This document shows positions 9,963-49,716 of a stretch of DNA of 64,000 nucleotides, piece by piece. The position numbers were made by a program, and so were the translations under genes. The notes under the pieces are model-generated. The model searched no databases and had not been told where the DNA came from. It saw only the letters and a program-made list of their open reading frames with translations. Position 1 is the stretch's first letter. Every line of letters starts with the position of its first letter. Origin of the DNA: Obrimoposthia wandeli (lineage: Eukaryota); NCBI GenBank assembly GCA_977020255.1, contig CDROCS010001028.1:124001-188000 (forward strand), written 5' to 3'.

Positions 9963-10012
9963 TTCCTACATCCAATAAAATAGGTGTCAATATGTGTGAA
10001 TTTTTATCTTTT

Positions 10013-10027
10013 TTTGCATAATGCAAT
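10013..10027. promoter_or_regulatory. Palindromic candidate enhancer-binding-protein site
   Basis: TTTGCA-TAA-TGCAAT dyad lying between the two divergent sigma54 promoters. Confidence 0.45.
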
Positions 10028-10057
10028 AATCTCACTCAAATTTTGCACTTTCCTCAT

Positions 10058-10073
10058 AGGCACAATAATTGCT
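10058..10073 (+). promoter_or_regulatory. sigma54 -24/-12 promoter for GT4
   Basis: AGGCACAATAATTGCT = GG-N10-GC, a near-consensus TGGCAC-N5-TTGC, about 40 nt upstream of ATG 10112. Confidence 0.7.
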
Positions 10074-10111
10074 TTTAACTGTAATACTGAATGTGATTAG
10101 AGAGGAATAAT

Positions 10112-11266
10112 ATGAAAAAAGTGGCTTTTATCACTCCAACCTTTCCGGTATTAAGTGAAACATTTATTCGAACTGAAGTAGATGCAATAAATGCATGTGG
10201 TCATGACGTATGTGTTATGACATTTGAAAAAAATAAAACTGATTATGCTTTTAACTATGCTATTTATAAAATTGGCGATGTTTTTAATACTCACTTTTTA
10301 AAAAAATTAAGCCCTCGTAAAATCATTGATTGTTTAACGTTCATTTATTCACAACAGTCTATGCCTAAAATATCTTTGTTTTGGTGTAGCTTAAAAATGG
10401 CGTCTCAAATGGCAAAGCACAATGTTCAACATATTCACGCGCATTTTGCTCAACATACCTGTTCTCACGGTATTGCTGCAGCCAAACTGATGGGCGTTTC
10501 ATGTTCTTTTGTTGCTCATGGTCATGATGTGTATGAGTTTCCTTTTGATCTTGATTTGAAAATTAAACATAGCGATTTCGTTGTCGCTGTTTGTAATGAT
10601 ATGCAAAATGATTTTAACAAGACCGCTGACGGCAATATTAAATTACTCCACTGTGGTGTGAAAACCCAACTATTTAAACCCCATACAAAACAAGATCAAG
10701 AGACAATCAAGCTCATTTTTATTGGGCGGTTAGTTGAACAAAAAGGTGTTAAGTATTTACTTGATGCGTTGAAACCCTTATGTGGACACTATCCTATTAC
10801 TTTAGATATTATTGGTAATGGTGAGTTATTAAAACCATTAAAAGAACAAGTTGCTCAACTTGGTTTAGCCCCTTATGTGCGATTCTTAGGCTCAAAACAA
10901 CCAAACTGGATCCAAGAGAACTTAGCTTTTTATGATTGCTTGGTAGCACCGTTTTGTTTTTCACATTCAGGATGTGTAGATACAGGCCCTGTCGTCTTGA
11001 AAGAGGCCATGGCTGTCGGTATACCCGTTATCACAACCAACATTATGGGCTGCAAAGAAATAGTAGCGCCTAATACGGGGTACTTAGTCAGAGAAAAAAG
11101 CGTACTCGATCTAACAAGGGTTATTAAAGAGTTTGTATCATTACCCATAGAACGAAGAATAGAAATGGGGATTTTAGCGCGGAAAAATGTAGAACTAAAT
11201 TTTGATGCATTGAAACAGGCGAAGGTACTTTCAAATTGGATAGAAACGCACACCGTAAATCAATAA
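10112..11266 (+). CDS. GT4 (GT-B) glycosyltransferase, WcaL-like
   Basis: FPVLSETFI, HIHAHF, GRLVEQKG and DTGPVVLKEAMAVG motifs. Confidence 0.9.
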   Translation: MKKVAFITPTFPVLSETFIRTEVDAINACGHDVCVMTFEKNKTDYAFNYAIYKIGDVFNTHFLKKLSPRKIIDCLTFIYSQQSMPKISLFWCSLKMASQMAKHNVQHIHAHFAQHTCSHGIAAAKLMGVSCSFVAHGHDVYEFPFDLDLKIKHSDFVVAVCNDMQNDFNKTADGNIKLLHCGVKTQLFKPHTKQDQETIKLIFIGRLVEQKGVKYLLDALKPLCGHYPITLDIIGNGELLKPLKEQVAQLGLAPYVRFLGSKQPNWIQENLAFYDCLVAPFCFSHSGCVDTGPVVLKEAMAVGIPVITTNIMGCKEIVAPNTGYLVREKSVLDLTRVIKEFVSLPIERRIEMGILARKNVELNFDALKQAKVLSNWIETHTVNQ

Positions 11267-11584
11267 AAGCGAGTACGAACAGTGCTTTTCAAGCTCGTTT
11301 TACCTAAACCGCTCCTGCTACTATCTAACTATTTATTTACTCGCAGGCACCGCGAATTATTTAGCTATTCATGCCCATGCTGGACGTACACAAAGCAATA
11401 AAATGGATACTAATTGGGTTCAGATTACGGCTAGCAGTTTAAGTGAGGCGTAAAATAGTGCCACTTATTGCAGGCGCTATGGCATTGATTACATAATTTA
11501 AGTGAAACCACACGCATATGTTTATTTCCCAAATGAATTAATTTGTTATTTGAAATATCCTTCAAAAATCAATTTGGAGTTCTT

Positions 11585-12439
11585 ATGTCAAGTAATAAGT
11601 TTAAGTGCCTAAGTTTACGCAAAAAAAATAAAAGGGATGCGTGTTTGAAAAGCATTCAAGTTAAAGATATTGATCTCTATATCCTTAATGCCCCTCAATT
11701 GCATGCGTTATGGGTAGAAGATAAAAAAAGAAAAGGCGTTAGTAACGAGGAAATCTCAAGCAAATTAGAAATACTTGGTCTTAGCTTTGCTGGTGTTGTT
11801 AGCTCAAGAGGTAATCTAGGACATGAACTTAAAGCCCTCACAGCTCTTGCCTTAGATATGAAAAAAGGGGGATCAATATTAGGTGCCTATGAAATAAAAA
11901 AACAAGCTTCTAAAAGTTATATAACCTTTAAAGGTAACCATAACCTCAGAAATATAGTGAAAGGGACTAGATATCTTGCATCAAATACTAAGCTTATTGC
12001 ATTAGGTATTGGAAAAGCAGGCCTTAAGGCTTCATCTAAATCTGGTGTTTTAGTTACAGTAATATATTCAGTTCCATATCGGACACTTGAATTATTTGTA
12101 AAAAAGGATTACTTGATAAATAACTGGGCTGTGAACGTATCCTCTGACATAATCAAAGCTTCTATTTCAGCGTGTTTTGGCTACATGGTGGCTTCTAGTC
12201 TTATTGCTACATCAGGTATTGTTGTGCTTCCCGTTGCTGCTGGTATCGTAGCTGCTTTATTTGTTGGTGAATCTCTAAGTTATATTGAAGACAGGTTTAA
12301 ATTAAAGGAAAAGTTAGTAACGGTATTGAACTCTTATGTTGAAGAAAGTGCACTTGATGAGGTAGATAGGATTGTCAATCGTCATTCTGCAATGAAATCG
12401 CATCAACAGATTAGAAATTCGGCTATCAGGGTTTATTAA
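11585..12439 (+). CDS. Putative membrane-disrupting polymorphic toxin, Tme-like
   Basis: ITFKGNHNLRNIVKGTRYLASNTKLIALGIG segment, then SDIIK (DxxK) and C-terminal hydrophobic Gly/Ala helices; AT-rich; directly followed by a DUF1240-like gene. Confidence 0.6.
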   Translation: MSSNKFKCLSLRKKNKRDACLKSIQVKDIDLYILNAPQLHALWVEDKKRKGVSNEEISSKLEILGLSFAGVVSSRGNLGHELKALTALALDMKKGGSILGAYEIKKQASKSYITFKGNHNLRNIVKGTRYLASNTKLIALGIGKAGLKASSKSGVLVTVIYSVPYRTLELFVKKDYLINNWAVNVSSDIIKASISACFGYMVASSLIATSGIVVLPVAAGIVAALFVGESLSYIEDRFKLKEKLVTVLNSYVEESALDEVDRIVNRHSAMKSHQQIRNSAIRVY

Positions 12440-12450
12440 GTTTGCTAAAG

Positions 12451-12987
12451 ATGAAGACTGAATTTAAAATCATTATTATCATTTTAGTTCTAGCTGCACT
12501 TTTTGTGTTTTCCTCATACTTATTAATTGATGGTGGAGGTACTCTATCGTTAACAGATCAAATAACGTTAGGGTATGAAGTTATTTATATGGATGTATCA
12601 TATATGACTTTCATATCAGCAGTGATCTCCATTCCATTCATTATTATAGCTATAATCATAGTAAACCATTGTCGTGAAACAAATAAAAACCTAACCTCAT
12701 ATAGGCGATTTTTTCTTATATCAACTGTGGTTGTTTTATTGTCTCTTAGTATTAATATTCCTGGCCGAAGTTTAGAAGCCATGAGAGTTACTAGCATCGT
12801 TGAAAATAAAGGTTATATCAAGTGTCCAACTTTTACTTTACTCTTTGGTGTAAAGACAGTTGATGCGTTTGCTAAAAAGTTGAATTATTGTCATGAACCA
12901 GAGATTATGCGAATTGCACAATATGGGTACATGGACGAGCTAGAGACAATAGATTTATTTATCAAAAGGACAGCATCTGAAAAATAA
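12451..12987 (+). CDS. DUF1240-like membrane protein, putative immunity (Tmi-like)
   Basis: Three hydrophobic helices and a C-terminal KGYIKC...YC motif; alternative TTG start at 12442, two bases after the upstream stop. Confidence 0.6.
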   Translation: MKTEFKIIIIILVLAALFVFSSYLLIDGGGTLSLTDQITLGYEVIYMDVSYMTFISAVISIPFIIIAIIIVNHCRETNKNLTSYRRFFLISTVVVLLSLSINIPGRSLEAMRVTSIVENKGYIKCPTFTLLFGVKTVDAFAKKLNYCHEPEIMRIAQYGYMDELETIDLFIKRTASEK

Positions 12988-35433: not shown

Positions 35434-37602
35434 ATGAAATGTCTGAAAATTTTAATCTCACTGCTCTTATTATCTGCTTCTATTGAAGCTTATAGCGCTC
35501 AGGCATTTGATGATTGTCCGACTGAAGCAATGCTATTTCAAGGCAGTCCATCCTCCGTTTATGAAGTTGACCTTTCCTCTGGATCATATCAAGTTGCAAA
35601 TGATCAGAATACTGGCGCAACAGGTGTTATAAATGCAGTAGGCTTTAATGAAGCAGATCGCTATATTTATGGCTGGAATAAAAATGATTCAACGGTTACC
35701 CGTATTAATCAACTTTACTTCATTGAAAATGTAACCGTTACAGGCTTACCTGCCAATACTAATTTCTTTGTCGGTGACGTATTTGATGATGCTTTGTACT
35801 TCTATCTTAGAGGTACTGGTATGTATAAAATCGATTTAAGCACGGGTGATGACAATTTCATTGCCGTAGAAATAATGACAGCAGCTGAAGCGACATTAAA
35901 CTTAACGGATTTTGCATTCTACCCTGAAACTGGCGAACTATTTGCGGTAGAAAATAGCGCTAATAGCCTATATAAAATTAATTTCGATGGTTCAGGCAAT
36001 GCCAGTTTCACAAATATTGCTTCAACAGGCTTAACAGGTTCTACGACATTTGGTGCACAATATTTTGACGTGAATGGCTTCATGTACATCAGTAATAATG
36101 TAGATGGGAACATTTACCGGTTAGACTTGCGCGATATTTCTGGAACAATTGATGCTACCGCAGAATTTTTCGCGAGCGGACCTATTTCTGGCCAAAATGA
36201 TGGTGCTCGATGTGCAAGCGCCCCTGTTGTCGCAACAAATACTGACTTTGGTGATGCACCTGAAAGTTATAAAACTAGCTTACTGACCAACGGACCTCGA
36301 CACTTTATAGGGCCTAACTTTTTCTTTGGCGCACTGGTTGATGATGAAGGCGACTCTGCTGTTTTATCAGGATCGTCTGATGATGCTACAGGTTCTGACG
36401 ATGAAGACGGTATTGTATTTATCAATGATTTGAAACAAGGCTCAGACACCCGCATTCAAGTAACCATTGGTGGTGGTGCAAATACTTATGTAAGCGCTTG
36501 GTTTGATTGGAATGATGATGGTGATTTTGCCGACGATGGTGAACAAGCGATCACTGACCAATTATTACCACCAGGGGTGAATATCCTTAAATTGCGTGTA
36601 CCAGAAACCGCAACCCCCGCAACAACGTGGGCACGATTTAGAGGGGCAAGAGATGCAGGCGTAACATACTTTGGTGGCGTAACAGACGGGGAAGTCGAAG
36701 ATTACAACGTAACGATTAACGAGCAGAACCTTACCCATAATTACTATCCAGGTGAAGGTACATGGGTCACTTTAGCCTACGAAGATAATTGGCCAGAAAA
36801 AGATGACTTCGATTTTAACGACGTTGTAATGTTTTACCGTGTTGATACTGTCACAGATACAAATACAGGGAACATTGTTCGCTATGATATCTCAGGCAGT
36901 TTACAAGCATACGGTGCTGATTTTATTAATGGTTTTGCCGTACAACTCGATGGCATACCACGATCGGCTATCAATGAAGATTTAGCAAAGCTTGTAGTAA
37001 ATAGCCAAACTAAACACGCAGCAACAGTACTAGAAGTTGGTACTACGAATGCCGTTGCGGTTATTTCACCCAATTTAAAAGCTGAAATTACAGATCCTGT
37101 ATGTTCAGGTAGTGAAGGAAACTATTACCGTGTCTGGCAAGGGTGTTCAACCGATAGTGCTAATCAATTCGTCTTTGAAGCAAGTATTCCTTTCATTACA
37201 CCGCTTGCCGCAGGTACAGGACCCAGCATGCCACTTAACCCATTCATTTGTGGGTTAGAAGGTCGCTATCATGGCGATTCATTTAGTGGAAATCCAGGTC
37301 GTTCTCTCGAGATACATTTGAAAGGTGACGATATTACATCGGCGGCTTCTTCAAGTTTTTTCTCTACCAATGATGATACGTCTACATATACAAACTGCCC
37401 AGGTGAAAATTGTGATACTTACCATACAGAAAATGGTATTTCATTTGGTTTACTTATTGATGGCGAATGGAACCACCCAAGTGAAAGAACCGATATTTTG
37501 GCAGCCTATCCAGATTTAGAAGGGTATGCGACTTCTGGCGGAACAACGAATACTGATTGGTACCTGCGCAGCAATGCTGTAATTAATCAATTATTTGAAT
37601 AA
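35434..37602 (+). CDS. Secreted LruC/DUF4842-domain protein with a GEVED domain; Bmp-like biofilm matrix protein
   Basis: Signal peptide; CPTEAMLFQG N-terminus; TDFGDAP; literal GEVEDY; TLAYEDNWPEKDDFDFNDVV LruC-type motif; followed by a lipoprotein gene. Confidence 0.8.
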   Translation: MKCLKILISLLLLSASIEAYSAQAFDDCPTEAMLFQGSPSSVYEVDLSSGSYQVANDQNTGATGVINAVGFNEADRYIYGWNKNDSTVTRINQLYFIENVTVTGLPANTNFFVGDVFDDALYFYLRGTGMYKIDLSTGDDNFIAVEIMTAAEATLNLTDFAFYPETGELFAVENSANSLYKINFDGSGNASFTNIASTGLTGSTTFGAQYFDVNGFMYISNNVDGNIYRLDLRDISGTIDATAEFFASGPISGQNDGARCASAPVVATNTDFGDAPESYKTSLLTNGPRHFIGPNFFFGALVDDEGDSAVLSGSSDDATGSDDEDGIVFINDLKQGSDTRIQVTIGGGANTYVSAWFDWNDDGDFADDGEQAITDQLLPPGVNILKLRVPETATPATTWARFRGARDAGVTYFGGVTDGEVEDYNVTINEQNLTHNYYPGEGTWVTLAYEDNWPEKDDFDFNDVVMFYRVDTVTDTNTGNIVRYDISGSLQAYGADFINGFAVQLDGIPRSAINEDLAKLVVNSQTKHAATVLEVGTTNAVAVISPNLKAEITDPVCSGSEGNYYRVWQGCSTDSANQFVFEASIPFITPLAAGTGPSMPLNPFICGLEGRYHGDSFSGNPGRSLEIHLKGDDITSAASSSFFSTNDDTSTYTNCPGENCDTYHTENGISFGLLIDGEWNHPSERTDILAAYPDLEGYATSGGTTNTDWYLRSNAVINQLFE

Positions 37603-37623
37603 AACACGACAAAGGATTCTAAT

Positions 37624-38082
37624 ATGAACAATTTACTTTTAATTATATCTGTCGTCTTTTTATTAATAGGCTGTGGCGGCGGTGGCGGAGATGATGCGCC
37701 AGCCAGTAATCCTGATTCACCGGCGGATAGTGGTACAGTAAACGATGAATCTTCAGCTAAATTTGAATCATTAGTCGTACCAGACGGCTTCAACTTTAAA
37801 AGCTCTTATCCTGTAAATATTGTTATTGACCTTAATGAAACAGAAACCATGTTTTTAAGTATTTATGGGAAATATTCGATCGATGCGACAGGTACACCCG
37901 TACCAGATGCAAACAGCCGAATTATTGCTGGTGAAATTAAAAATGGTGATTTCAAAGGTACAATTACTGCCACATCCCAATTAAAAAGCTTATTAATTGA
38001 AGCGTGGTATGTAGAAAGCACACAAGAACCTTTCAGAGAAACCGTTAGCCTACCCGCTGAACAGGTAAATATTACGAATTAA
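37624..38082 (+). CDS. Lipoprotein, Bal-like partner of the Bmp-like protein
   Basis: Lipobox LLIGC followed by a Gly run; co-oriented 21 bp after the LruC gene. Confidence 0.75.
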   Translation: MNNLLLIISVVFLLIGCGGGGGDDAPASNPDSPADSGTVNDESSAKFESLVVPDGFNFKSSYPVNIVIDLNETETMFLSIYGKYSIDATGTPVPDANSRIIAGEIKNGDFKGTITATSQLKSLLIEAWYVESTQEPFRETVSLPAEQVNITN

Positions 38083-38124: not shown

Positions 38125-38149
38125 AAGCAGCCAGTTACTGGCTGCTTTT
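38125..38149. terminator. Intrinsic terminator after the lipoprotein gene
   Basis: AAGCAGCCAG-TTA-CTGGCTGCTT followed by T residues. Confidence 0.8.
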
Positions 38150-38200: not shown

Positions 38201-38563
38201 TTATAAGTCATACATTTCAGTCATAATTGCACTTGCTGCCATCAATGCCACACAAGACATGCACCAACAAAAAGCAAATACAAACCATTTTTGAATGTGC
38301 TTAGGAACATTATCCCTTTTTTCGAGCATCCCATAACGTTTAGCATGAAAAGACCAAAGGAATACTGTGGCATATTGCAATACCCCTGTACCTGCAAAAA
38401 AGAGAGTCAAGCTATAAAATCGAACACCATCGTCAAGATTATCTTCTAATAAAGGTAGCCATTTTGATTTTAAATAGAACACTAGTAATATCCAAATAAA
38501 AGTGCCAACACTCCAAAATAATAATAAGATTAAAAAGATGTTTTCAGCTGTTTTCAATGACAT
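38201..38563 (-). CDS. Small membrane protein, putative immunity paralog 2
   Basis: Shares the YLK.KWL...ED..DD, AG.G...YA..FL and R..VPK.I pattern with 38794..39144. Confidence 0.75.
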   Translation of the reverse strand: MSLKTAENIFLILLLFWSVGTFIWILLVFYLKSKWLPLLEDNLDDGVRFYSLTLFFAGTGVLQYATVFLWSFHAKRYGMLEKRDNVPKHIQKWFVFAFCWCMSCVALMAASAIMTEMYDL

Positions 38564-38564
38564 A

Positions 38565-38708
38565 TTATTTAATGGAATTCATACGATATAAAAACCTCCC
38601 TCCTTTATTGCCTAAAAATCCACCAGACATTACGCCAGCACCTGCTACGATGGAACACCAAAAGAAACTAGTCCCGCTAGTTGGTAAACCAAATACAATG
38701 GAGCAAGT
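38565..38708 (-). pseudogene. Orphan C-terminal fragment of a toxin paralog, with no start codon
   Basis: Manual translation TCSIVFGLPTSGTSFFWCSIVAGAGVMSGGFLGNKGGRFLYRMNSIK* aligns with the C-terminus of 39150..40169 (GCNILFGVESLGTSLFWCTIVAGSGAGYLGG...NGIK*). Confidence 0.85.
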
Positions 38709-38793
38709 TGTACTCGATACAGGTGGTAGGTTAAACCTTACCTGACAGGGACTTGATCTCTGAAAATGCCTATATTTATGTAGCTATGGCGAT

Positions 38794-39144
38794 TTATTCG
38801 AGTAATCCACTACCAAAAAGCAGTGCAGCACCAATAAATATAAGCAATTGATTTAAAATAAATAGTCGTCGTATTTTCTTCGGTACTCTATTTCTTATTT
38901 CAAATCTATTACAGCGTCTAGCTTGCCAGTCAAATAGGAATATAAGTGCGTAACGTGTGATTCCTAAACCAGCAGAAAACACATTAGAAGAAAAAGAATA
39001 AGTGCTATCATCAACAATATCTTCTACAAAAGAGAGCCACTTACCTTTTAAATACAAAACAAAAAGAATACTGATAAATGCAACACCTAATCCAGCTACA
39101 AAAATAAGCATGGATATTTGTTGAGTTAAATTTAATTCAGTCAT
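38794..39144 (-). CDS. Small membrane protein, putative immunity paralog 1
   Basis: Three hydrophobic segments; starts 5 bp after the stop of the 339-aa gene; paralogous to 38201..38563. Confidence 0.75.
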   Translation of the reverse strand: MTELNLTQQISMLIFVAGLGVAFISILFVLYLKGKWLSFVEDIVDDSTYSFSSNVFSAGLGITRYALIFLFDWQARRCNRFEIRNRVPKKIRRLFILNQLLIFIGAALLFGSGLLE

Positions 39145-39149
39145 ATTTA

Positions 39150-40169
39150 TTATTTAATTCCATTAAAGTTATATATTTCCACTCCTAATTTCTCCCCTTT
39201 TGTCCCCCCAAAACTTCCCCCTAAGTAGCCTGCTCCAGATCCAGCAACTATTGTGCACCAAAATAAACTTGTACCAAGGCTTTCAACGCCAAATAATATA
39301 TTACATCCAGCATACGCAAGTGCACCGCCAAGGTAACCACCACCAATACTACCAACAGCCTTACCCGTTTGAGTAAACTTAGCCTTGCTACACGTAGCAG
39401 TATCACTAACAGTGCAAGCTTTTTGAATATTAGCTACCGCATCAAATCCAGTTAGTGCAATACCTACATAGCCTACACGCTTCAAATTACGTGACATTTC
39501 AGCTACAGCGGCATAGTTTTTGTGGAAATTAGGGACAGTGGTGACATTGCCGGGTTGCCTGCTCCATTGGTGAATAATGCTTTTAGTGCTTAGCCCTAAA
39601 TTACTGCGAATATCTCCAGATATAAGCTTTCCACCTAATGTAGGTTGTGCAAAACGACTGAGTGCGGTATCTAAACGCGCAAATTGCATTTTACGTTGAG
39701 TAAAGAAACGTCGGTTATTTAAATTGCCGTTTAATTTATAACTCGTAACATAGGTACGTTCTAAATCTTTTAAAATTAATTTTACTTGTTTGGTATGAGC
39801 ATTCCATGCAGTATTACTTACACCTAACAACAAACCATTATAACTAGCAACGTTAGATAAAAATTCATACCTATTCACCAGCAGCTGTTTTTCTGAATTG
39901 CTCAGTTTTAATAAGGTTGAGTCAACAGCTTTCGCTATGTTTAAAAACTCCGTTTCTTCAATTGTGCACTCTCGACTAGTCGCTGGTGATAACAATACAA
40001 CTTGTCCAACTTTTACCTTGTTGTCTTTTAAATGAGAATTTACTGCCCTAAAATGCTCGTAGACTATTTTATCTGGCGAGTTATACATAATCATTATTAG
40101 CTGATCAATAGGTATAGCCTTTTCAACTATGTGCATTGCCATGTGATTTTTATCAGATGACGCAACCAT
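39150..40169 (-). CDS. Putative membrane-acting polymorphic toxin/effector
   Basis: Degenerate LysM-like N-terminus (FRAVNSHL..VKVGQVVLL) and a Gly-rich hydrophobic C-terminal hairpin with paired Cys; GGAG SD. Confidence 0.6.
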   Translation of the reverse strand: MVASSDKNHMAMHIVEKAIPIDQLIMIMYNSPDKIVYEHFRAVNSHLKDNKVKVGQVVLLSPATSRECTIEETEFLNIAKAVDSTLLKLSNSEKQLLVNRYEFLSNVASYNGLLLGVSNTAWNAHTKQVKLILKDLERTYVTSYKLNGNLNNRRFFTQRKMQFARLDTALSRFAQPTLGGKLISGDIRSNLGLSTKSIIHQWSRQPGNVTTVPNFHKNYAAVAEMSRNLKRVGYVGIALTGFDAVANIQKACTVSDTATCSKAKFTQTGKAVGSIGGGYLGGALAYAGCNILFGVESLGTSLFWCTIVAGSGAGYLGGSFGGTKGEKLGVEIYNFNGIK

Positions 40170-40512
40170 TTATTACTCCTCAATATTATTTCTGAAGTAT
40201 TTCCAATTAACTTACTAGTATGCATAAGAAAGAATAAGCAATTGAAGCATGATGAAAAACAAACAAACATGCCGAAGAGTAAATACTGCGATGGACAACA
40301 AATAAGTCTCTGTAAAAAAGAATGATTTCACTGATATGTACATTCGACTAAGGAAGGTAGCTAACGCCGAAAAACTAACTACTGTTGACCTTTTTATCAC
40401 TATTTAATGCGGTGTTTTGGCCTATTTCGACCAATATAAAATAGCGTTATATAATGCAGCCAACTGGTGGCTGCTTTTATTTCAGGGTTTGCGACAGTTA
40501 TTACAATTGGGG

Positions 40513-42897: not shown

Positions 42898-43537
42898 AGT
42901 ATTCTGTAATCTATGAACAATATCTTGCCGCTATGATCGCAAGTATTTTATTGGTTGTCATATTTTATATTGAATTAGCGTTACAGAAAAAGCCGCTACA
43001 TTCACCACGTCGTAAAAATGAATCAAGCAGCCCGTCTTTAGGGCTGTAATGTGTCTGACGGAAAACAAGCAAAAAAGTCACTTCTGCGATCTTTTTTAAC
43101 TCGGATCTGCCCCGAAACGATTTAGCAAAATATCTCATTTTAATTATGTGGTTAATACTTGGGAGCTGTCCTTTATGTGGCAGAACGCTACATTTTGAGT
43201 AGATAATTTAATCGATATTTATTTGCAGAGATGTAATGCTCACTTTGTGCGCATAGCGGAAGCTAGAAACTCGTTAATCCTTACGTCCGCTTCAAGCTCA
43301 AATCTGCCGTTCATATTCGATTCTTGAACATTAACTATCACCGTTATGATCACAATTACCACACAGAACGTGTGATTTTATTGGGTTAACTTCATTAAAA
43401 GAGAGCTGTTTTATACGTAAACCAGCCCTTAATTCTTCTGGTTAAAAACATTAAACATAAACAGCAAACATTATTGGTGTTATATTTTTTTTGTTAAGTT
43501 GCTCACAAACCTTAGCTTATGCCACAGTGAATACACC

Positions 43538-44737
43538 TTAAATCAATGTCGTTAATACTTGAGGATTATTATGTAATGTTCGATGAACTGGGCAGCGATC
43601 AGCTATTTCCATTAGTCTTGCTTTATCTGAATCTTTCATAGGCCCAAATAACTGAACTTTACGAATCAATGACTCTATTTTCGGATCTTGTTCTGAGACA
43701 TTGGCTGCATCGGCTAAATAATTACGTTCGTGAGATAAGAATACTTCCACATGCTCTAGAGGAATTTTTTTGTGGTCAGCATACATGCGAATTGTCATCG
43801 CTGTGCAGGCACCTAAAGCAGCAAGTAAGTGCTCGTAGGGATCTGGACCTGAATTTTTTCCACCTACTTGTGTTGGTTCATCTGCATACCAGTGATGGTG
43901 GTCACTAAATACTTCCTGCTGAAACTTATGATCAAGCTCTGCCACTAAAACATGTCCTTTTGTTATTTTTGGATTAGATATTTCGGGCGTTGGAATATAT
44001 CGACTTGCCCATCCAGAAATCGTTTGTGCGACATACTCACTATCTATTGATTTTGATAAAAGATGATCCGCAGTGTCTAGGCTAACAAAACTTTTAGGGT
44101 GCTTAGCCGCTTTATAGATTTTCTCCGCATCGGAAATATCAACAGTTAAATCGATAGGTGAATGCAGTACAAGCAAAGCCTTATTAAGGTGCTGTATATG
44201 TTCTGTCGTTTGATTACGTAAATCGTCTATAAATTGTTTTTTAATCGTAAACTCACGCGTACCTAAGCTCACTCTCGCCTGACCACTTTTTTCTATGGTA
44301 TCAAGGTGAGCATCAAAGTTGTGTATTACATGGCTTGCTTCATACGGAGCTGCAATTGTCACTATCGCTTTCACCTCTGGAAGTTGTGCCGCCATCGCTA
44401 AAACGGCAGCGCCACCGAGGCTATGTCCAATCAATAATTGAGGCGCTTGGTAATGCAACTCAAGAAACTTTGCAGCTGCCATTAAATCTTCTGTATTGGA
44501 TGAAAAATTTGTATTGGCAAAGTCGCCATCGCTATTTCCCAAGCCAGTGAAGTCAAATCGAAAAACAGCAAAGCCATGTTGTACAAGAAATCGACTAATT
44601 CGCGAAGCCGCTGCAACATCTTTACCACAGGTAAAACAATGGGCAAACAGTACATAGGCTCGTATAGTTTGATCTGGTGTTTCTAGCAAACCAGCCAGAT
44701 TTTGCCCTTGGCTAGGAAATTCTACTTTAGTTCTCAT
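43538..44737 (-). CDS. Bifunctional alpha/beta hydrolase - OsmC family protein
   Basis: [16 protein letters not shown] nucleophile elbow and ADHLL; C-terminal OsmC domain ([23 protein letters not shown]); start MRTKVEF at 44737. Confidence 0.9.
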
Positions 44738-44847
44738 CGATTCTATCCTCAGTTTGTAATAAAACCTCAGGTAAAAATATCGCTCAAGGTTTACTTGTTT
44801 AATCAAAAGCAGCTAGCTGTACTTTGTTGTGCCTGTAATTATTACGG

Positions 44848-45261
44848 CTAAGCAAGTAATAAAGGCTCAATAACTGCCTGCCACTGAGCTAAGCTTGATT
44901 CGTGATCAACTGGAACCTTATCGGCATTGTTGATAAATAAAGTCGGGGTTGCCCAAACGGCCTTAGTTGCTGCGTAGCGAATGGGTGTACGTGCTTGAAC
45001 GTATATATCGCGATCACTCATTCTGTTAAAGAATTTCCCACGATCTGCTAATGCGAATAGTCCCAAGCTCATATCCCAAGCTTGTCGGTGGTTACTGAGG
45101 GTAATCAAATGAACCCTTAGGCTGACGGATTTACCCTGGTAATATTCTGATACTTGCAGCGAATGTGGGCATTGAATATCAATAAATGCATCAATAGTAA
45201 TTTGGGCTGCTGCATCACCGAGAAGAAAACCGCTCGAACGGTGTGGTATAGGTATAGCCAT
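44848..45261 (-). CDS. Thioredoxin/DsbA-fold protein, possibly internally deleted
   Basis: GFLLGDAAAQITIDAFIDIQCPHS (CxxS) and VWATPTLFIN; short for this fold. Confidence 0.65.
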   Translation of the reverse strand: MAIPIPHRSSGFLLGDAAAQITIDAFIDIQCPHSLQVSEYYQGKSVSLRVHLITLSNHRQAWDMSLGLFALADRGKFFNRMSDRDIYVQARTPIRYAATKAVWATPTLFINNADKVPVDHESSLAQWQAVIEPLLLA

Positions 45262-45340
45262 ATGAAGTACTGTCCCTTTCTTACTGTAGATTAATTACTT
45301 TCGATGAATGATTATAGTGGTATTGATTGAATGACTATTT

Positions 45341-45880
45341 TCATTCTAAGCATAAAGCGATCTTTTCATCATTAACCTGATGCTTGAAACGTGTTAATAA
45401 CAGTCTCAATTTTGGATGAATATACGTTTTACAAAAGGGTTTATTAGGTGAATTATATAAGTAATTCTGTAATTCATCCTTATTCGCCTTAAACGAATAA
45501 AATGGCAGTACCTGCGTGATAATTGGTTTATCAAAATCACTTTGTAAGGAGTCTAAAACTTTGTAGGCTTCTTGGTTTTGAGCATCGTTATAGGTATATA
45601 TTGCCGACCGGTATTTTTTCCGCATGGAGTGATTAGCTGTGGATGCATGAGTATGTAAATGAATTTCGATCAATATCTGCAAACTAATCAGAGATTGATC
45701 AAAATATACTTCAATAGCTTCAGATAATTCAGCATTATTGTCGCTTGAAGCGATCCACCCTTGATTCACCACTTTGATACCGATAAGCGACTCGAAAACG
45801 CCTTCGGTACACCAATGGCAACCACCACCTAAACCAATCTTGCTGAAGTTTTCATTATGCATAGTGTTCTCTCTAGTCAC
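45341..45880 (-). CDS. msrA: Peptide methionine sulfoxide reductase A, atypical paralog
   Basis: GGGCHWCTEGVF, EAIEVYFD, YRSAIY and PFCKTYI motifs. Confidence 0.8.
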   Translation of the reverse strand: MTRENTMHNENFSKIGLGGGCHWCTEGVFESLIGIKVVNQGWIASSDNNAELSEAIEVYFDQSLISLQILIEIHLHTHASTANHSMRKKYRSAIYTYNDAQNQEAYKVLDSLQSDFDKPIITQVLPFYSFKANKDELQNYLYNSPNKPFCKTYIHPKLRLLLTRFKHQVNDEKIALCLE

Positions 45881-45902
45881 TATTGAAGTTACTTTTATTA
45901 GC

Positions 45903-46403
45903 TCATTTTACTGAAGGTAATACCCAGTCACGCCGAGGAAAGTGGCAAGTATAACCATTAGGTATTCTTTGCAGATAATCTTGATGTTCTACTTCTGCTT
46001 CCCAAAAATCGCCTGCAAGTGCCAATTCAGTAACCACAGTCCCAGGCCATAAACCTGATGCATTAACATCGGCGATCGTTTGCATTGCTACAGCATATTG
46101 TTCAGCTGAACAATAATAAATCGCTGAACGATATGATGAGCCTTGGTCATTTCCTTGTTGGTTTTTTGTTGTTGGATCATGGATCTGAAAGAACAATTCA
46201 AGAATACTGCGGAAACTAACAACATCAGTATTGAATGATATTTCTATTCCTTCAGCATGATTGCCATGATTACGATAAGTTGCGTTAATAACGTCACCAC
46301 CAGTATAACCAACTCGGGTTGACGTGACTCCGGGAAGTTTGCGTATAAGATCTTGCATGCCCCAGAAGCATCCACCAGCCAAAAGAGCACGTTCAATTTT
46401 CAT
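45903..46403 (-). CDS. msrA: Peptide methionine sulfoxide reductase A
   Basis: [32 protein letters not shown] and AEVEHQDY...GYTCH motifs. Confidence 0.95.
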
Positions 46404-46405
46404 AT

Positions 46406-46852
46406 TTATATCTTCTCCACTTGATTAACATATTCGCCATAACCATTAGTGACCATATCATCACGGTGGATAAAACGAAGAGAAGCTGAATTAATACAAT
46501 AACGTAAACCACCTTCACTTTTTGGACCATCGTTAAATACATGTCCTAAATGACTGTCCCCATAACCTGAGCGAACTTCAGTTCGAATCATACCGTGACC
46601 GTTATCATTAATTTCTTTGATATTTTTCGACTCAATCGGTTTGGTAAAACTTGGCCAACCACAGCCAGATTCAAATTTATCTGAAGAAGCAAATAGTGGC
46701 TCACCTGAAACAATGTCGACATAAATGCCCGGCAGAGTATTATTAAGATGCTCTCCACTACCTGGTCGCTCTGTGCCACTTTCTTGAGTTACACGATATT
46801 GTTCTTTGGTTAGTGCTGAAATTGCATCTGCGGATTTTTGATATGTTGTCAT
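46406..46852 (-). CDS. msrB: Methionine-R-sulfoxide reductase
   Basis: [27 protein letters not shown] and RYCINSASL; start MTTYQKS at 46852. Confidence 0.95.
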
Positions 46853-46901
46853 AATTTTCTGTCCTCGGCATTTTGTCACCTTTTAGAGTGACACGCTGAT
46901 A

Positions 46902-46927
46902 TGATCTACCCCCGATAAAACGGACAC
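46902..46927 (+). mobile_element. Solitary IS3-family-like terminal inverted repeat, no transposase
   Basis: TGATCTACCCCCGATAAAACGGACAC resembles IS3-type ends (TGATCT..CCC......GGACAC); no partner end or transposase ORF was seen nearby. Confidence 0.5.
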
Positions 46928-47101
46928 ATATACTTTCAGGCTACTATGCTTCATATTCTATTGGAGAATATCAGCTCTATTTCAACGGCAGTTACTCACT
47001 AAGCCACTTAGCACCGGAGGCTAAAAAGTTGCACAACAAAGAGCATTCGGCGCAACCTTGAAACATCCCAGTGCATTGGCAATGTTATGTATTGAAATAC
47101 C

Positions 47102-47668
47102 CTATTGAGAATTCAGTGTCGGATAAGCTTCAGTGTATATCCAGTCTTTATCTTTAGCTGGCACATGGCAACTTAGGCAATCCGTTTTATAGTCAGTTGC
47201 AACGTTCTTGGCTTTATTATCTGGCTTGTATAAAGCCCAACCCCAGCCATCCCCCCACAAAGGATTATTGGTAAACCGGCCTTTCACATCTTTGACCATG
47301 ACGAACCATTGTTTAATGTCACTCGTGGCATAATTGACACCTTCCCCTGTAGTATAGCTACCCGATTTAGATGCCCTAAGCTCTTTAACCAGTACTGCAC
47401 CGTCAGGGAATTTACCCGTTTTACGAAACGCCTCTACAGATTCTTTCTCAGTGTATACATCATGAAAACCACTGGCGCCACCAGAAGGCACAAACCATGA
47501 ACCTAAATGAACCATATTAGTTCGAAAGTTTAAGGGAAAACTAATATTGCCATTGCTGTCAACATAAGGAGAAAATGTATCATCTGCCATTACCGAAAAT
47601 GAACCTACACCAAGAATGACAACACAAGCTATGCTTCTCCCTAATTTTTTTAATCGAATGTATATCAT
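47102..47668 (-). CDS. Cytochrome P460-family protein B
   Basis: Signal peptide, FPDGAVLVKEL, WFVMVKD, WGWALY and a C-terminal CLSCH heme motif. Confidence 0.85.
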   Translation of the reverse strand: MIYIRLKKLGRSIACVVILGVGSFSVMADDTFSPYVDSNGNISFPLNFRTNMVHLGSWFVPSGGASGFHDVYTEKESVEAFRKTGKFPDGAVLVKELRASKSGSYTTGEGVNYATSDIKQWFVMVKDVKGRFTNNPLWGDGWGWALYKPDNKAKNVATDYKTDCLSCHVPAKDKDWIYTEAYPTLNSQ

Positions 47669-47670
47669 TA

Positions 47671-48300
47671 TTAATTACCTTTTGGCTCAACATAGTTATT
47701 ATTCAAGTCAGATTCATGACCGCCTGTAGCACTTTTCCCCTTTGCTTTACCTGCACTAAGAACTGGGTAATACTGAGTGAAAACAAAGTCATCTGCCGCA
47801 GCTCCTGCATGACATGAATTACAAGACGTTGTAGGAAATGCTTTTGCTGTTTTTGACAATGTTTTATGATCCGCACTTGAAAAACTAAAGTATGCCCAAT
47901 TACCAGGCTCATTTTCAAAATGCTTCTTGCTTTTTATTGTAGCTTCTAGGCCAACAAATTCGCCCATAAAATAGCCTTTACCGCTAACAGCCGATTTTGA
48001 ACCCACAGAAACAAGTTCTTTAATCAGGATAGTACCATCACGAAATTTACCGGTGTCTTTCCAATGCTTCCAGCTTTTAGGGTCAATATAGACATTATGC
48101 ATTTCAGGAAATGCCGCTTTTCCACCATTCATGTCATTGGGGGTAACGGGTGTTCCAATGTAGATCCACTCTCGATAACCAGTAGGACGTTCAAGCTCAC
48201 CATTTTTCATTGAAAACGCTTCATTTGCATGAGTGATCCCTGAAAAAATGACTTGCACAAACAGGAACGATATTGCTATTAATACTTTATTAATTTTCAT
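47671..48300 (-). CDS. Cytochrome P460-family protein A
   Basis: Signal peptide, HNVYIDP, FRDGTILIKELVSVG, GYFMGEFVGLEATIK, EPGNWAYF and CNSCH motifs. Confidence 0.9.
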   Translation of the reverse strand: MKINKVLIAISFLFVQVIFSGITHANEAFSMKNGELERPTGYREWIYIGTPVTPNDMNGGKAAFPEMHNVYIDPKSWKHWKDTGKFRDGTILIKELVSVGSKSAVSGKGYFMGEFVGLEATIKSKKHFENEPGNWAYFSFSSADHKTLSKTAKAFPTTSCNSCHAGAAADDFVFTQYYPVLSAGKAKGKSATGGHESDLNNNYVEPKGN

Positions 48301-48478
48301 AACATACTCTGTTTTATTTATGAAATTTAACTATAGATGAGTAAATTTGATTTGCTGTATTCACAATACTCAAAAATGTCACTGACCTACTCAAAGTTTC
48401 TATATCAACATTTTAATGCTGCTTTATTTTATTAATTTTAACTATAGTAATGATGTCTATTGAAGCTTAAGGAATGTA

Positions 48479-49420
48479 ATGCTCAAAAATGTCGCTCATC
48501 AACTCAAATGTCCTACATCAGAATTTAATGTACTTGATGATGTCATTGATACTCTTCGCTTTCGTGGCAGTATATTCTTTCATTCAAGCCTTGCTGCACC
48601 GTGGGGTGTGTCGTATTCATCTTGCCTAATGCCTAGATTCCATGTTGCATTAGAAGGTGGGTTTTATGTAGGTGTTGATGCAAATACGATTAATTTAAAA
48701 CAGATGGATATTGCTATGATCCCCCATGGAGAAAAGCATTGGATAGCTGATAATGTAAATAGTCAACTAATAGCTAGTGAACGCGCGAGAGATATTTGTG
48801 CGTTAGGTATGCCACTTTTTCAACAAGGTGAAATCACTAATAAAATTATGTGTGGAATAGTTGAGTATGATGAGGCTATTAAGCATCCTATTCTCAGTGC
48901 TTTGCCTTCCATAATTCAACTTTCTAATATCGCATCAAATGATACTATTTGGATGACAGTAAAATTAATTGACGCGGAAATAAATAGAGCAAATGGTAAT
49001 AAAAACAGCATAATAGATCGTTTAACCGAAGTCTTATTTATTCAGCTACTCAATAACTTCATCAAGAAAGATGAGCACCTAACAGGCTTCTTATCAGCAC
49101 TTAAAGAACCGCGGTTAAATAAAATATTACAGCTCATTCATCAGAATCCTGAAAGACAATGGACTCTAGATATTATTAGTGATGCTGTCGGTATGTCTCG
49201 GGCTACACTGCAGCGTAAGTTTAAAGCTAACATAGGTGTATCTCCTATGGTTTATATTAGTCGTTGGCGTATGGCAAAAGCTTATCAGTTATTAAAATAT
49301 TCCAATTTATCTCTTGAAGGAATTGCTGATGGTATTGGGTTTTCAAACGCGCGTACACTTTCGCATGCATTCAAAGATTATTATGGGGATACACCGAGTC
49401 AATTCCGTAAGAAATTATAA
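48479..49420 (+). CDS. AraC-family regulator with an N-terminal cupin, RclR-like
   Basis: LAAPWG, RFHVALEG, IMCG, IIDRLTEVLFIQLL and WTLDIISDAVGMSRATL motifs; divergent from the P460 genes. Confidence 0.85.
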   Translation: MLKNVAHQLKCPTSEFNVLDDVIDTLRFRGSIFFHSSLAAPWGVSYSSCLMPRFHVALEGGFYVGVDANTINLKQMDIAMIPHGEKHWIADNVNSQLIASERARDICALGMPLFQQGEITNKIMCGIVEYDEAIKHPILSALPSIIQLSNIASNDTIWMTVKLIDAEINRANGNKNSIIDRLTEVLFIQLLNNFIKKDEHLTGFLSALKEPRLNKILQLIHQNPERQWTLDIISDAVGMSRATLQRKFKANIGVSPMVYISRWRMAKAYQLLKYSNLSLEGIADGIGFSNARTLSHAFKDYYGDTPSQFRKKL

Positions 49421-49716
49421 AAACTAATATAATTACTGATACTATATTTTTGGATAAGCAATAATGTGAGTTGTTCTAAACATTTGAAGTTGCAAAATAT
49501 GACCTTGGTGCGGAAAAGACTCGCCTTTATAAATCGATGATTCAATATCGATCTCGTTAATTTGTTGCACTTATTGTATTACTCCAGATGCGCCCCATTA
49601 ATGAATAGGTTTCCCTCGCCTGATTAGGTGTACAAATTCATTAAGCCACAACACAACCTTGACGAAAACACCCTGAAAAAATCTTCTCTCTACTGTATTT
49701 AACGTGTAAAAACAAA

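What the first reader, a model, noticed from the sequence alone, without database searches (positions are those of the whole stretch)
38201..40169. Polymorphic-toxin-like cassette array with a hidden orphan toxin tip
The order on the minus strand is a 339-aa gene, immunity-like gene 1, a start-less 47-codon fragment (38565-38708, absent from the ORF track) homologous to the last ~50 aa of the 339-aa protein, then immunity-like gene 2. Both toxin ends read IK-stop followed within a few bases by the next ATG (ATTAAATAAT..ATG). A main toxin plus immunity followed by orphan C-terminal/immunity cassettes is the established architecture of CDI/Rhs/MafB loci. Here the conserved part is a Gly-rich hydrophobic hairpin with a C..FG...GTS.FWC.IVAG motif, which I do not recognise as a named toxin family. 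The inference is an undescribed membrane-acting toxin family that diversifies by tip replacement.
Basis: partly seen in the sequence, partly recalled or inferred. Interest (0 to 1): 0.78.

Follow-up and report, generated by a model that had tools for sequence, protein, structure and literature searches.

The report
T6SS pore-toxin locus with swapped tip
A marine Photobacterium carries a type VI secretion membrane toxin whose last ~65 residues and immunity gene were swapped for a foreign pair, leaving the old toxin tip and its immunity gene behind. This is a clear new example of a known way that bacterial weapons diversify.

Summary
On the minus strand lie a 339-aa gene, a 116-aa three-helix membrane gene, a start-less fragment matching the last 51 residues of the 339-aa protein (49% identity, E 1e-13), and a 120-aa paralogue of the small gene.

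Comparison with the syntenic locus of Photobacterium frigidiphilum shows a real tip replacement. Toxin residues 1-275 are 96% identical in DNA. The tip and first immunity gene then have no DNA match. The orphan tip and second immunity gene match again at 88%. The break falls at the same place (residues ~267-275) in five independent pairs, and tip identity tracks immunity identity (partial Mantel r 0.76, p 0.0002).

The family is not undescribed. It aligns end to end (hhalign 99.6%, E 1e-24) with WP_025789713.1 of pVA1 plasmids. That protein is a T6SS1-dependent antibacterial effector, reported to be homologous to the Vibrio cholerae ion-channel effector TseVs. Distant relatives are fused to PAAR or VgrG.

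The orphan tip looks like an eroding relic: it has no start codon and a 5-residue deletion in the conserved glycine zipper. The retained immunity gene is intact. I class it as a new member of a known kind.

The parts
40170..40455 (-). 5' untranslated and promoter region of the toxin operon, bounded upstream by a hairpin terminator at 40456-40474 after the helicase gene
   Evidence: Hairpin found. This region is 96% identical to P. frigidiphilum and P. profundum. No promoter is called above chance.
39150..40169 (-). 339-aa toxin gene: a stand-alone, cargo-type TseVs-like T6SS membrane effector with no signal peptide
   Evidence: ORF. 76 close homologues and 584 representative clusters. hhalign against WP_025789713.1 gives 99.6%, E 1e-24, 322 columns. 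No Pfam or NCBIfam hit.
39984..40142 (-). Residues 10-62: beta-alpha-alpha-beta module with a LysM-like fold
   Evidence: AF2 of residues 1-105 gives pLDDT 86. The Foldseek top hits are almost all LysM domains, but the E-values are weak (0.3-4), with target-normalised TM about 0.7 and rmsd about 2.5 A over 52 columns. The Pfam LysM model does not hit.
39345..39371 (-). Residues ~267-275 (conserved TQTGKAxGS stretch): recurrent recombination junction between the conserved body and the exchangeable tip
   Evidence: In 45-nt sliding windows, identity drops from over 90% to about 50-60% at nt ~800-825 in win/L001, L013/L014a, L013/L014b and L014a/L014b. In L006/L013 it rises there from about 55% to about 88%.
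39153..39344 (-). Residues 276-339: type-A tip, made of two glycine-zipper stretches flanking a hydrophobic core with Cys289 and Cys305
   Evidence: Hydropathy and GxxxG scan. 52% identical to the P. frigidiphilum tip although the N-terminal part is 95% identical. The nearest tip is in Psychromonas antarctica (76-80%).
38794..39144 (-). imm1: 116-aa three-TM inner-membrane protein, the presumed cognate immunity to the type-A tip
   Evidence: 76% identical to the protein downstream of the Psychromonas toxin. Member of a coherent 29-member family with a Y..F....A.R motif. No Pfam family.
38565..38754 (-). Displaced orphan type-B tip: a relic of the previous toxin 3' end, including its stop codon, with no start codon
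   Evidence: 88% DNA identity to the P. frigidiphilum orphan, with the same 5' boundary, which is also present in P. profundum SS9. It has a 5-residue and a 3-residue in-frame deletion relative to the P. frigidiphilum copy. dS 0.116, omega 0.45 from only 10 substitutions.
38201..38563 (-). imm2: 120-aa intact three-TM orphan immunity gene of type B
   Evidence: 87.5% and 80% identical to the two immunity proteins of P. frigidiphilum. dS 0.099, omega 0.63.
38125..38147 (.). GC-rich hairpin with a T run: the likely bidirectional terminator that ends the operon
   Evidence: No terminator-like site lies between imm1 and imm2, so imm2 is probably co-transcribed (inference).

Best explanation
[quoted passage not shown] Inferred mechanism: it is loaded on the T6SS spike and delivered to the periplasm of a neighbouring Gram-negative cell. 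There its C-terminal glycine-zipper helices insert into the inner membrane and form an ion-conducting channel that collapses the membrane potential. The small three-TM proteins are inner-membrane immunity proteins that neutralise the toxin by recognising its last ~65 residues.

Shown here: the family is modular. A conserved body (residues 1 to ~270) is joined at a fixed junction to an exchangeable cassette made of the tip plus its immunity gene. This cassette moves horizontally between lineages.

In the window's lineage an incoming type-A cassette replaced the previous main tip, which is a type-B variant in the two sister genomes. The start-less type-B tip and imm2 downstream come from an earlier displacement, since they are shared with those genomes. 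The orphan tip is decaying. imm2 is kept intact, probably because it protects against type-B toxins still fired by close relatives such as P. frigidiphilum.
For: Anatomy and paralogy.

Tip replacement:
- The window and the syntenic P. frigidiphilum locus are 96% identical up to residue ~275. They then share no DNA similarity across the tip and imm1. They are 88% identical again across the orphan tip and imm2.
- dS is equal for the body, the orphan and imm2 (0.10-0.12), while the main tips are saturated.
- The same junction is seen in five pairs.
- Tip identity tracks immunity identity independently of the body: partial Mantel r 0.76, p 0.0002. Examples: Colwellia/Pseudoalteromonas N 53%, tip 88%, immunity 77%; two Pseudoalteromonas copies N 96%, tip 44%, immunity 38%.
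- Orphan tips or extra immunity genes occur in L001, L004, L010, L014, L015, L019, L048 and P. profundum.

T6SS link:
- The whole domain sits at the C-terminus of VgrG (P0098, P0187) and of PAAR proteins (P0107, P0109, P0113, P0152).
- TssC is present in 14 of 14 genomes that carry the family.
- The assembly holds a TssC copy 97% identical to that of P. frigidiphilum.

Function by homology:
- hhalign 99.6%, E 1e-24 to WP_025789713.1.
- bioRxiv 10.1101/2024.06.03.597196 shows that protein to be toxic in the periplasm, hcp1-dependent and neutralised by the downstream gene. It also reports homology to the ion-channel effector TseVs.

The displacement model for T6SS effector/immunity arrays is established in Vibrio cholerae (PMC5361080).
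Against: - No T6SS gene lies next to the locus in the window or in any close homologue examined.
- The assembly is a 1.35-Gb mixture, so assigning a T6SS to this bacterium rests on 97% identity of one contig.
- Homology to TseVs itself was not tested, because the sequence and paper were not available.
- The immunity family shows no similarity to WP_025789712.1.
- Structure prediction of the C-terminal half has low confidence and matches no known pore-former.
- Toxicity, the target compartment, channel formation and tip-immunity binding are all untested for this clade.
Confidence: 0.75

Rival explanations
1. The orphan tip is a functional reservoir, as in Rhs/CDI orphan modules: it is kept in frame so that recombination can re-attach it to the toxin body and switch the strain back to type B.
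For: The frame is open over 53-60 codons in the window and in P. frigidiphilum. Both indels between them are multiples of three (9 and 15 nt). Omega is 0.45. In L004 the orphans keep the body from residue 142 onwards, which would allow homologous recombination. In L048 the orphan has an ATG and is called as a 79-aa ORF.
Against: The window orphan starts after the junction, so it has no upstream homology apart from about 60 nt inside the tip. It lacks five residues of the conserved second glycine zipper, which spans the invariant G314 and the nearly invariant G317. The P. profundum copy has lost its 3' end and its immunity gene. The omega estimate rests on 10 substitutions and cannot be told apart from neutrality. 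Two in-frame indels have a chance probability of about 0.11.
Confidence: 0.12
2. The array arose by local tandem duplication of a toxin-immunity pair followed by a 5' deletion of the second toxin copy and divergence, with no horizontal replacement.
For: The two cassettes are paralogous. Tandem full-length duplicates exist in Pseudoalteromonas ostreae (L014).
Against: Tip A and imm1 are much closer to Psychromonas antarctica (76-80% / 76%) than to the neighbouring cassette (49% / 38%). The sister species has a different main cassette on a 96%-identical body with equal dS in the flanks. The breakpoint recurs at one position in unrelated lineages.
Confidence: 0.06
3. The system does not depend on T6SS. 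It could be a bacteriocin-like or self-lysis membrane protein pair, released by lysis or another route, or a membrane stress module rather than a weapon.
For: No T6SS gene is adjacent in any stand-alone locus. There is no recognised loading domain (MIX, FIX or RIX). Glycine-zipper membrane toxins also occur in other delivery systems such as T7SS LXG and Cdz (PMC12744356 and PMC10434224, seen).
Against: The same complete domain is fused to VgrG and PAAR. A validated homologue is hcp1-dependent. TssC is present in 14 of 14 carriers, against 66 of 140 in the genus Pseudoalteromonas. The polymorphism and orphan immunity arrays are typical of interbacterial weapons.
Confidence: 0.07

Closest known systems
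TseVs/TsiVs of Vibrio cholerae E1 and the pVA1-plasmid pair WP_025789713.1/WP_025789712.1 of AHPND Vibrio parahaemolyticus (Liu et al. 2025, Cell Host Microbe 33:1146; bioRxiv 10.1101/2024.06.03.597196). Also the RIX-fused 'colicin A-like pore-forming' class (PMC10435454).
   Same: Full-length homology of the ~330-residue toxin domain to WP_025789713.1 (hhalign 99.6%, E 1e-24). This covers the LysM-like start, the NLxLSxxSIIH motif, the Cys252/Cys260 pair and the Gly-rich C-terminus. A small membrane-protein gene follows, abutting or overlapping the toxin gene. Both families have been mis-annotated as 'SSU ribosomal protein S2'. The link to T6SS is shared.
   Different: Only about 25-27% identity. 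The window protein has no N-terminal extension: WP_025789713.1 has about 130 extra residues, and others carry RIX, PAAR or VgrG. The Cys289/Cys305 pair is specific to this clade. The immunity proteins show no detectable similarity. As far as I could read, tip-level modular exchange and orphan tips are not mentioned in the papers held. TseVs itself was not compared.
Sequential displacement arrays of T6SS effector-immunity modules in Vibrio cholerae (Kirchberger et al. 2017, PMC5361080)
   Same: An incoming effector-immunity module replaces the effector 3' part. The old immunity gene, and sometimes an effector 3' remnant, is pushed downstream. This creates orphan immunity arrays that are thought to protect against kin.
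   Different: Here the locus is an isolated cargo effector far from any hcp, vgrG or T6SS cluster. The unit exchanged is only the last ~65 residues of one conserved toxin domain plus the immunity gene, always at one junction.
Rhs, CdiA and MafB polymorphic toxins with orphan CT/immunity cassettes
   Same: A conserved N-terminal part, a sharp demarcation, a variable C-terminus that co-varies with the immunity gene, and start-less orphan C-termini followed by immunity genes.
   Different: The protein is small (340 aa). There is no Rhs/YD, FHA or MafB delivery scaffold. The tips are alleles of one membrane hairpin rather than unrelated toxin folds. The window's orphan lacks the conserved upstream segment that lets Rhs/CDI orphans recombine.
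Pore-forming colicins (A, E1, Ia) and their integral-membrane immunity proteins; glycine-zipper T6SS toxins Tse4, Tse5-CT and Ssp6/Tpe1
   Same: Membrane-depolarising toxins neutralised inside the membrane by small multi-TM immunity proteins. From my own knowledge of the colicin literature, specificity resides in the hydrophobic helical hairpin. GxxxG-type zippers are shared.
   Different: No sequence or fold match to colicin domains was found here. HHpred-level similarity to colicin A is claimed only for distant relatives.
Tme/Tmi (DUF1240) membrane-disrupting T6SS effectors (PMC7046647)
   Same: Orphan, ~300-aa T6SS membrane effectors of marine Vibrionaceae with a small multi-TM immunity protein. 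A Tme-like pair lies in the same window at 11543-12987.
   Different: No profile similarity (hhalign probability 0.1%). No DxxK motif. None of the 29 immunity proteins hits DUF1240.
TseVF of Vibrio fluvialis (PMC12861213)
   Same: A T6SS membrane-disrupting cargo effector with an N-terminal LysM module that is dispensable for periplasmic toxicity.
   Different: It is 1197 aa with an unrelated C-terminal toxin region and a periplasmic TPR-like immunity protein, and it depends on a Tap adaptor.

Membership tests
TseVs-like T6SS channel-forming effectors | Sequence homology of the whole toxin domain to an experimentally validated member | tested here: met
   hhalign of A3 against WP_025789713.1: probability 99.6%, E 1e-24, query 9-335 aligned to target 132-480. 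tblastn E 9e-11. The protein's identity was confirmed by its accession in the plasmid record.
TseVs-like T6SS channel-forming effectors | Direct homology to TseVs (XDT02158.1) itself | not testable with these tools
   Neither the sequence nor the paper is held. The link rests on the statement of 'robust homology' in bioRxiv 10.1101/2024.06.03.597196.
TseVs-like T6SS channel-forming effectors | T6SS-dependent delivery | not testable with these tools
   Indirect evidence only: VgrG and PAAR fusions of the same domain, TssC in 14 of 14 carrier genomes, and a TssC 97% identical to that of P. frigidiphilum in the assembly.
TseVs-like T6SS channel-forming effectors | Immunity protein homologous to that of the validated pair | tested here: not met
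   hhalign of A4 against WP_025789712.1: probability 0.05%. Both are small and encoded immediately downstream, but they are not detectably related.
TseVs-like T6SS channel-forming effectors | Ion-channel formation and membrane depolarisation | not testable with these tools
   Only sequence features are available: two glycine-zipper stretches (269-285 and 309-329) flanking a hydrophobic core.
Polymorphic toxin systems with orphan cassettes (Rhs/CDI/MafB; V. cholerae T6SS displacement arrays) | Conserved N-terminal part and variable C-terminus, separated by a sharp and recurrent junction | tested here: met
   The junction lies at nt ~800-825 (residues ~267-275) in five independent pairs. N 95% against tip 52% for window/L001.
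Polymorphic toxin systems with orphan cassettes (Rhs/CDI/MafB; V. cholerae T6SS displacement arrays) | The variable C-terminus co-varies with the downstream immunity gene | tested here: met
   Partial Mantel test of tip against immunity, controlling for N: r 0.76, p 0.0002, 16 pairs.
Polymorphic toxin systems with orphan cassettes (Rhs/CDI/MafB; V. cholerae T6SS displacement arrays) | Start-less orphan C-termini followed by immunity genes downstream of the main pair | tested here: met
   Seen in the window, L001, L004, L048 and P. profundum. Immunity-only arrays occur in L010, L015 and L019.
Polymorphic toxin systems with orphan cassettes (Rhs/CDI/MafB; V. cholerae T6SS displacement arrays) | Orphans keep a stretch of the conserved region that allows homologous re-attachment | tested here: not met
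   The window, L001 and P. profundum orphans begin after the junction, near residue 283. This feature is met only in L004, where the orphans begin at residue 142.
Polymorphic toxin systems with orphan cassettes (Rhs/CDI/MafB; V. cholerae T6SS displacement arrays) | Alternative C-termini are unrelated toxin domains | tested here: not met
   All tips align with each other (38-88% identity) and keep the C..FG...G.S..WC motif.
Tme/Tmi | Tme domain (DxxK followed by a TM helix) and a DUF1240-type immunity protein | tested here: not met
   hhalign probability 0.1% to DUF1240-linked effectors. No DUF1240 hit in 29 immunity proteins at E up to 1.
LysM domain (PF01476) | Match to the LysM profile, or the beta-alpha-alpha-beta LysM fold | tested here: inconclusive
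   No Pfam hit in 64 members. The AF2 model (pLDDT 86) has the beta-alpha-alpha-beta order, and the top Foldseek hits are LysM domains, but with E 0.3-4. Two distant relatives carry an additional canonical LysM-like N-terminus.
Colicin A-type pore-forming domain | Ten-helix bundle with a buried hydrophobic hairpin; sequence or fold match to solved colicins | tested here: inconclusive
   No colicin appears among the Foldseek, VIA-align or PDB-profile hits, but the C-terminal half is modelled at pLDDT below 55.

The most novel reading that the evidence does not exclude
In this clade the whole immunity-recognition code of a channel-forming T6SS effector lies in a ~65-residue glycine-zipper membrane hairpin. 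This hairpin is exchanged, together with a three-TM immunity gene, at one fixed junction (residues ~267-275) that plays the role of the VENN or PxxxxDPxGL demarcation of CDI and Rhs toxins. This would be a minimal 'sub-domain' polymorphic toxin: alleles of one pore are told apart inside the membrane, and natural A/B alleles and orphan immunity genes provide a ready-made specificity matrix.
Probability: 0.45. Interest if true: 0.65.

Novelty: new member of a known kind. Interest (0 to 1): 0.5.

Why it matters
How small integral-membrane immunity proteins distinguish self from non-self pore-forming toxins is poorly understood. This family offers dozens of natural tip/immunity alleles on nearly identical toxin bodies, a precisely mapped exchange junction, and sister genomes caught just before and after a swap. 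That makes immunity specificity testable with simple co-expression assays.

It also extends the recently described TseVs-like effectors beyond Vibrio. Relatives occur in Photobacterium, Psychromonas, Colwellia, Moritella, Shewanella, Agarivorans, Thalassomonas, Pseudoalteromonas and other lineages, in stand-alone, PAAR-fused and VgrG-fused forms.

Finally, it shows that the displacement model of T6SS immunity arrays also operates at orphan loci far from T6SS clusters. The family has no Pfam or NCBIfam model and is annotated as 'hypothetical' or wrongly as ribosomal protein S2, so a profile would improve annotation.

Tried and rejected
- Pfam and NCBIfam scans of the toxin, 64 homologues and 29 immunity proteins gave nothing meaningful. 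There were only spurious Ribosomal_S2 and one weak Gly-zipper_Omp hit.
- The full-length AF2 model had mean pLDDT 59. Foldseek against the PDB found nothing. VIA-align found only generic helical bundles with Z up to 8.6, below the level that is informative for helical proteins.
- A PDB profile search found nothing.
- Complex prediction of toxin residues 225-339 with imm1 gave no verdict (score 0.10, mark 0.34). This is not evidence either way.
- A Tme/DUF1240 relationship was rejected.
- No MIX-type motif was evident by eye. This was not formally tested.
- The within-genus co-occurrence test in Pseudoalteromonas was uninformative. Only 2 of 140 species genomes carry the close family, and both have TssC.
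- dN/dS of the orphan tip rests on too few substitutions (10) to decide between constraint and neutrality.
- Promoter scans were no better than shuffled controls.
- Truncated homologues in Moritella yayanosii and Photobacterium sanguinicancri turned out to be frameshifted or IS-associated pseudogenes rather than array orphans.
- Literature searches for the locus tag PBPRA3334, and a first search for 'TseVs' alone, gave nothing useful.
- The TseVs paper is not held.
Full report
**Observation**

The minus strand of window 38201-40169 carries four elements:
- a 339-aa ORF (39150-40169);
- five bases later, a 116-aa ORF (imm1, 38794-39144);
- a start-less stretch that ends in a stop at 38565-38567;
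- one base later, a 120-aa ORF (imm2, 38201-38563).

The start-less stretch aligns with residues 289-339 of the 339-aa protein (25/51 identical, E 1e-13). imm1 and imm2 are 38% identical (E 3e-22). Upstream of the fragment there is an in-frame stop and no usable start codon. Both toxin ends read IK-stop followed almost at once by the next ATG. A hairpin terminator closes the unit at 38125-38147 and another lies upstream at 40456-40474. None lies between imm1 and imm2.

**The organism and the assembly**

The window's contig is syntenic with Photobacterium frigidiphilum JCM 12947 (locus L001) at 84-96% DNA identity over about 17 kb. The helicase gene lies on one side and the DUF4842 protein gene on the other. 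The assembly it comes from is a 1.35-Gb, 6912-contig mixture, so statements about 'the genome' need care. It does contain a TssC gene 97% identical to that of P. frigidiphilum, and only this one locus of the toxin family.

**The protein families**

The 339-aa protein has 76 close homologues of about 340 aa in marine Gammaproteobacteria. These include Photobacterium, Psychromonas, Colwellia, Moritella, Shewanella, Agarivorans, Vibrio alginolyticus/diabolicus, Thalassomonas and Pseudoalteromonas. All are named hypothetical or, wrongly, ribosomal protein S2. No Pfam or NCBIfam model hits it or any of 64 homologues.

The alignment is conserved along its whole length, with invariant Cys68, Cys252, Cys260, Cys289 and Cys305. 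The protein has the following features:
- Residues 10-62 fold as beta-alpha-alpha-beta. The top structural matches are LysM domains, though with weak E-values.
- Residues ~100-240 are predicted as a helical bundle.
- The last 70 residues contain two glycine-zipper stretches around a hydrophobic core.
- There is no signal peptide.

The small proteins form one family of three-TM proteins with a Y..F....A.R motif. They have a strongly basic loop between TM2 and TM3 and an acidic loop after TM1. They have no Pfam family.

**Tip replacement is real**

Against L001, the window is 96.2% identical from the promoter to toxin codon ~275. It has no DNA match across the tip and imm1. It is 87.8% identical again across the orphan tip, imm2 and beyond. 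Synonymous divergence is the same for the toxin body (0.118), the orphan (0.116) and imm2 (0.099), whereas the main tips are saturated.

P. frigidiphilum instead carries a type-B-like main tip and immunity gene, 79% identical in DNA to the window's orphan cassette. This is followed by the same orphan tip with the same 5' boundary and a second immunity gene. P. profundum SS9 has the same orphan boundary at one locus, there without its 3' end and immunity gene, and a type-A-like cassette at a second locus, PBPRA3334. The window's tip A and imm1 are closest to those of Psychromonas antarctica (76-80% and 76%).

Across 16 toxin/immunity pairs, tip identity predicts immunity identity after controlling for the toxin body (partial Mantel r 0.76, p 0.0002). 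There are striking discordances in both directions. In five independent pairs the identity profile breaks at the same place, nt ~800-825, within the conserved TQTGKAxGS stretch. The exchangeable unit is therefore residues ~276-340 plus the immunity gene, about 550 nt.

**Arrays elsewhere**

- A Pseudomonadales MAG contig (L004) has a full toxin and immunity gene, then a copy starting at residue 142 with an immunity gene, then a bare tip with an immunity gene, then another partial copy.
- A 230-kb metagenome contig (L048) has a toxin, a type-A immunity gene, a 79-aa tip ORF and a type-B immunity gene.
- Thalassomonas has four tandem immunity genes.
- Pseudoalteromonas loci have two toxins and several immunity genes, or immunity genes alone.

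**Delivery**

An exhaustive profile search found 584 representative clusters. In many of them the complete domain (positions ~10-337) follows an N-terminal extension. Two are VgrG fusions and several are PAAR fusions. The PAAR protein P0107 aligns over 324 columns (E 3e-41). All 14 genomes carrying the close family encode TssC, against 66 of 140 species genomes in Pseudoalteromonas. Stand-alone loci are never next to T6SS genes. They sit beside transposases, at the edge of the Vibrio T3SS1 cluster, or in ordinary chromosomal contexts. This is the pattern of orphan cargo effectors.

**Link to described effectors**

tblastn against plasmids hit the pVA1-type plasmids of AHPND Vibrio parahaemolyticus. 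The gene is WP_025789713.1, with WP_025789712.1 overlapping it downstream. Profile comparison gives 99.6% probability, E 1e-24, over 322 columns from the LysM-like start to the Gly-rich end.

A preprint (10.1101/2024.06.03.597196) shows that this pair is toxic in the E. coli periplasm and is neutralised by the downstream gene. It also shows that the pair confers hcp1 (T6SS1)-dependent killing. The preprint reports homology to TseVs of V. cholerae E1, an ion-channel-forming, depolarising effector that binds the VgrG trimer (Liu et al. 2025). It also reports homology to a Pantoea protein and to a RIX-fused 'colicin A-like' class. I could not obtain TseVs or its paper.

In a sample of 251 Vibrionaceae species genomes, 32 have a superfamily match. 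Only 4 have the close ~340-aa clade. The immunity family is not detectably related to WP_025789712.1. The family is unrelated to Tme/Tmi.

**What the orphan is**

The orphan tip has no start codon. It begins after the recombination junction, and in the window it lacks five residues of the conserved second zipper as well as three residues further up. The P. profundum copy has decayed further.

Its frame is open in the window and in P. frigidiphilum, both indels between those two copies are multiples of three, and omega is 0.45. With ten substitutions, none of this departs from neutrality. I read it as a relic of displacement, as in the V. cholerae model of sequential effector displacement with retention of immunity genes (PMC5361080). 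imm2 is intact and probably co-transcribed. A protective role against type-B toxins of close relatives is an inference.

**Mechanism, and what is shown versus inferred**

| Status | Claims |
|---|---|
| Shown | Anatomy; homology; the modular junction; co-variation of tip and immunity; horizontal cassette exchange; fusion of the domain to T6SS spike proteins |
| Inferred from a validated distant homologue | T6SS delivery; action in the periplasm; membrane depolarisation |
| Inferred from sequence only | Glycine-zipper insertion; recognition of the tip by the immunity protein inside the membrane; disulfide formation by the conserved cysteines; a peptidoglycan- or spike-binding role for the LysM-like module |

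A complex prediction for the tip with imm1 gave no verdict.

**Verdict**

However, the family is a branch of the recently described TseVs-like effectors, and the orphan-array architecture follows a known evolutionary model. The new elements are the clade itself, the sub-domain scale and fixed junction of the exchange, and a sister-genome pair that captures the swap.

Noticed in passing
window 43114-49693: The ~6.6-kb block holding the cytochrome P460 / Msr cluster has no counterpart in the otherwise syntenic P. frigidiphilum locus. L001 4243-4970 sits between segments that match window 49694 and 43113. This looks like an insertion or deletion between close relatives.
   Followed up: no
window 11543-12987 (+): The 298-aa and 181-aa pair noted earlier as Tme-like is related to effectors that lie upstream of DUF1240 genes in Shewanella waksmanii: 26% identity, E 3e-17, to L044:12161-13084. 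It is unrelated to the family studied here, and neither protein hits Pfam.
   Followed up: partly
whole assembly G000: The window belongs to a 1.35-Gb assembly of 6912 contigs, with 14 TssC matches on 8 contigs. This means several T6SS-bearing bacteria, or several clusters, are mixed with what is probably a large eukaryotic genome. The window contig is Photobacterium.
   Followed up: partly
L020-L024 (Vibrio alginolyticus/diabolicus), 10001-11395: The homologous toxin/immunity pair sits immediately after the T3SS1 translocon genes (LcrV- and YopD-family) at the edge of the T3SS cluster. The arrangement is identical in five assemblies.
   Followed up: no
L037 10001-21494: The PAAR-fused relative lies next to a defence island (AbiEi/AbiEii, Mrr-like nuclease, HEPN-RES). 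It is followed by a 126-aa gene with only faint similarity to the immunity family (hhalign E 0.005).
   Followed up: partly
proteins P0096, P0100, P0106, P0117, P0121, P0123, P0165, P0204, P0224: Several recurrent N-terminal extensions (about 110-490 aa) precede the toxin domain and have no Pfam hit. They may be undescribed T6SS loading domains.
   Followed up: no
window 35434-38082 (+): A 722-aa secreted protein (DUF6923 repeat, GEVED, DUF4842) and a 152-aa lipoprotein-like ORF flank the locus. They are conserved in P. frigidiphilum and their function is unknown.
   Followed up: no
L056 and L057 (P. profundum SS9 chromosome 1 at 1.955 Mb and 3.78 Mb): SS9 carries two loci of the family. One is B-type, with the shared orphan boundary but no second immunity gene. 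The other (PBPRA3334) has an A-like cassette. So paralogous loci within one genome could serve as cassette donors.
   Followed up: partly
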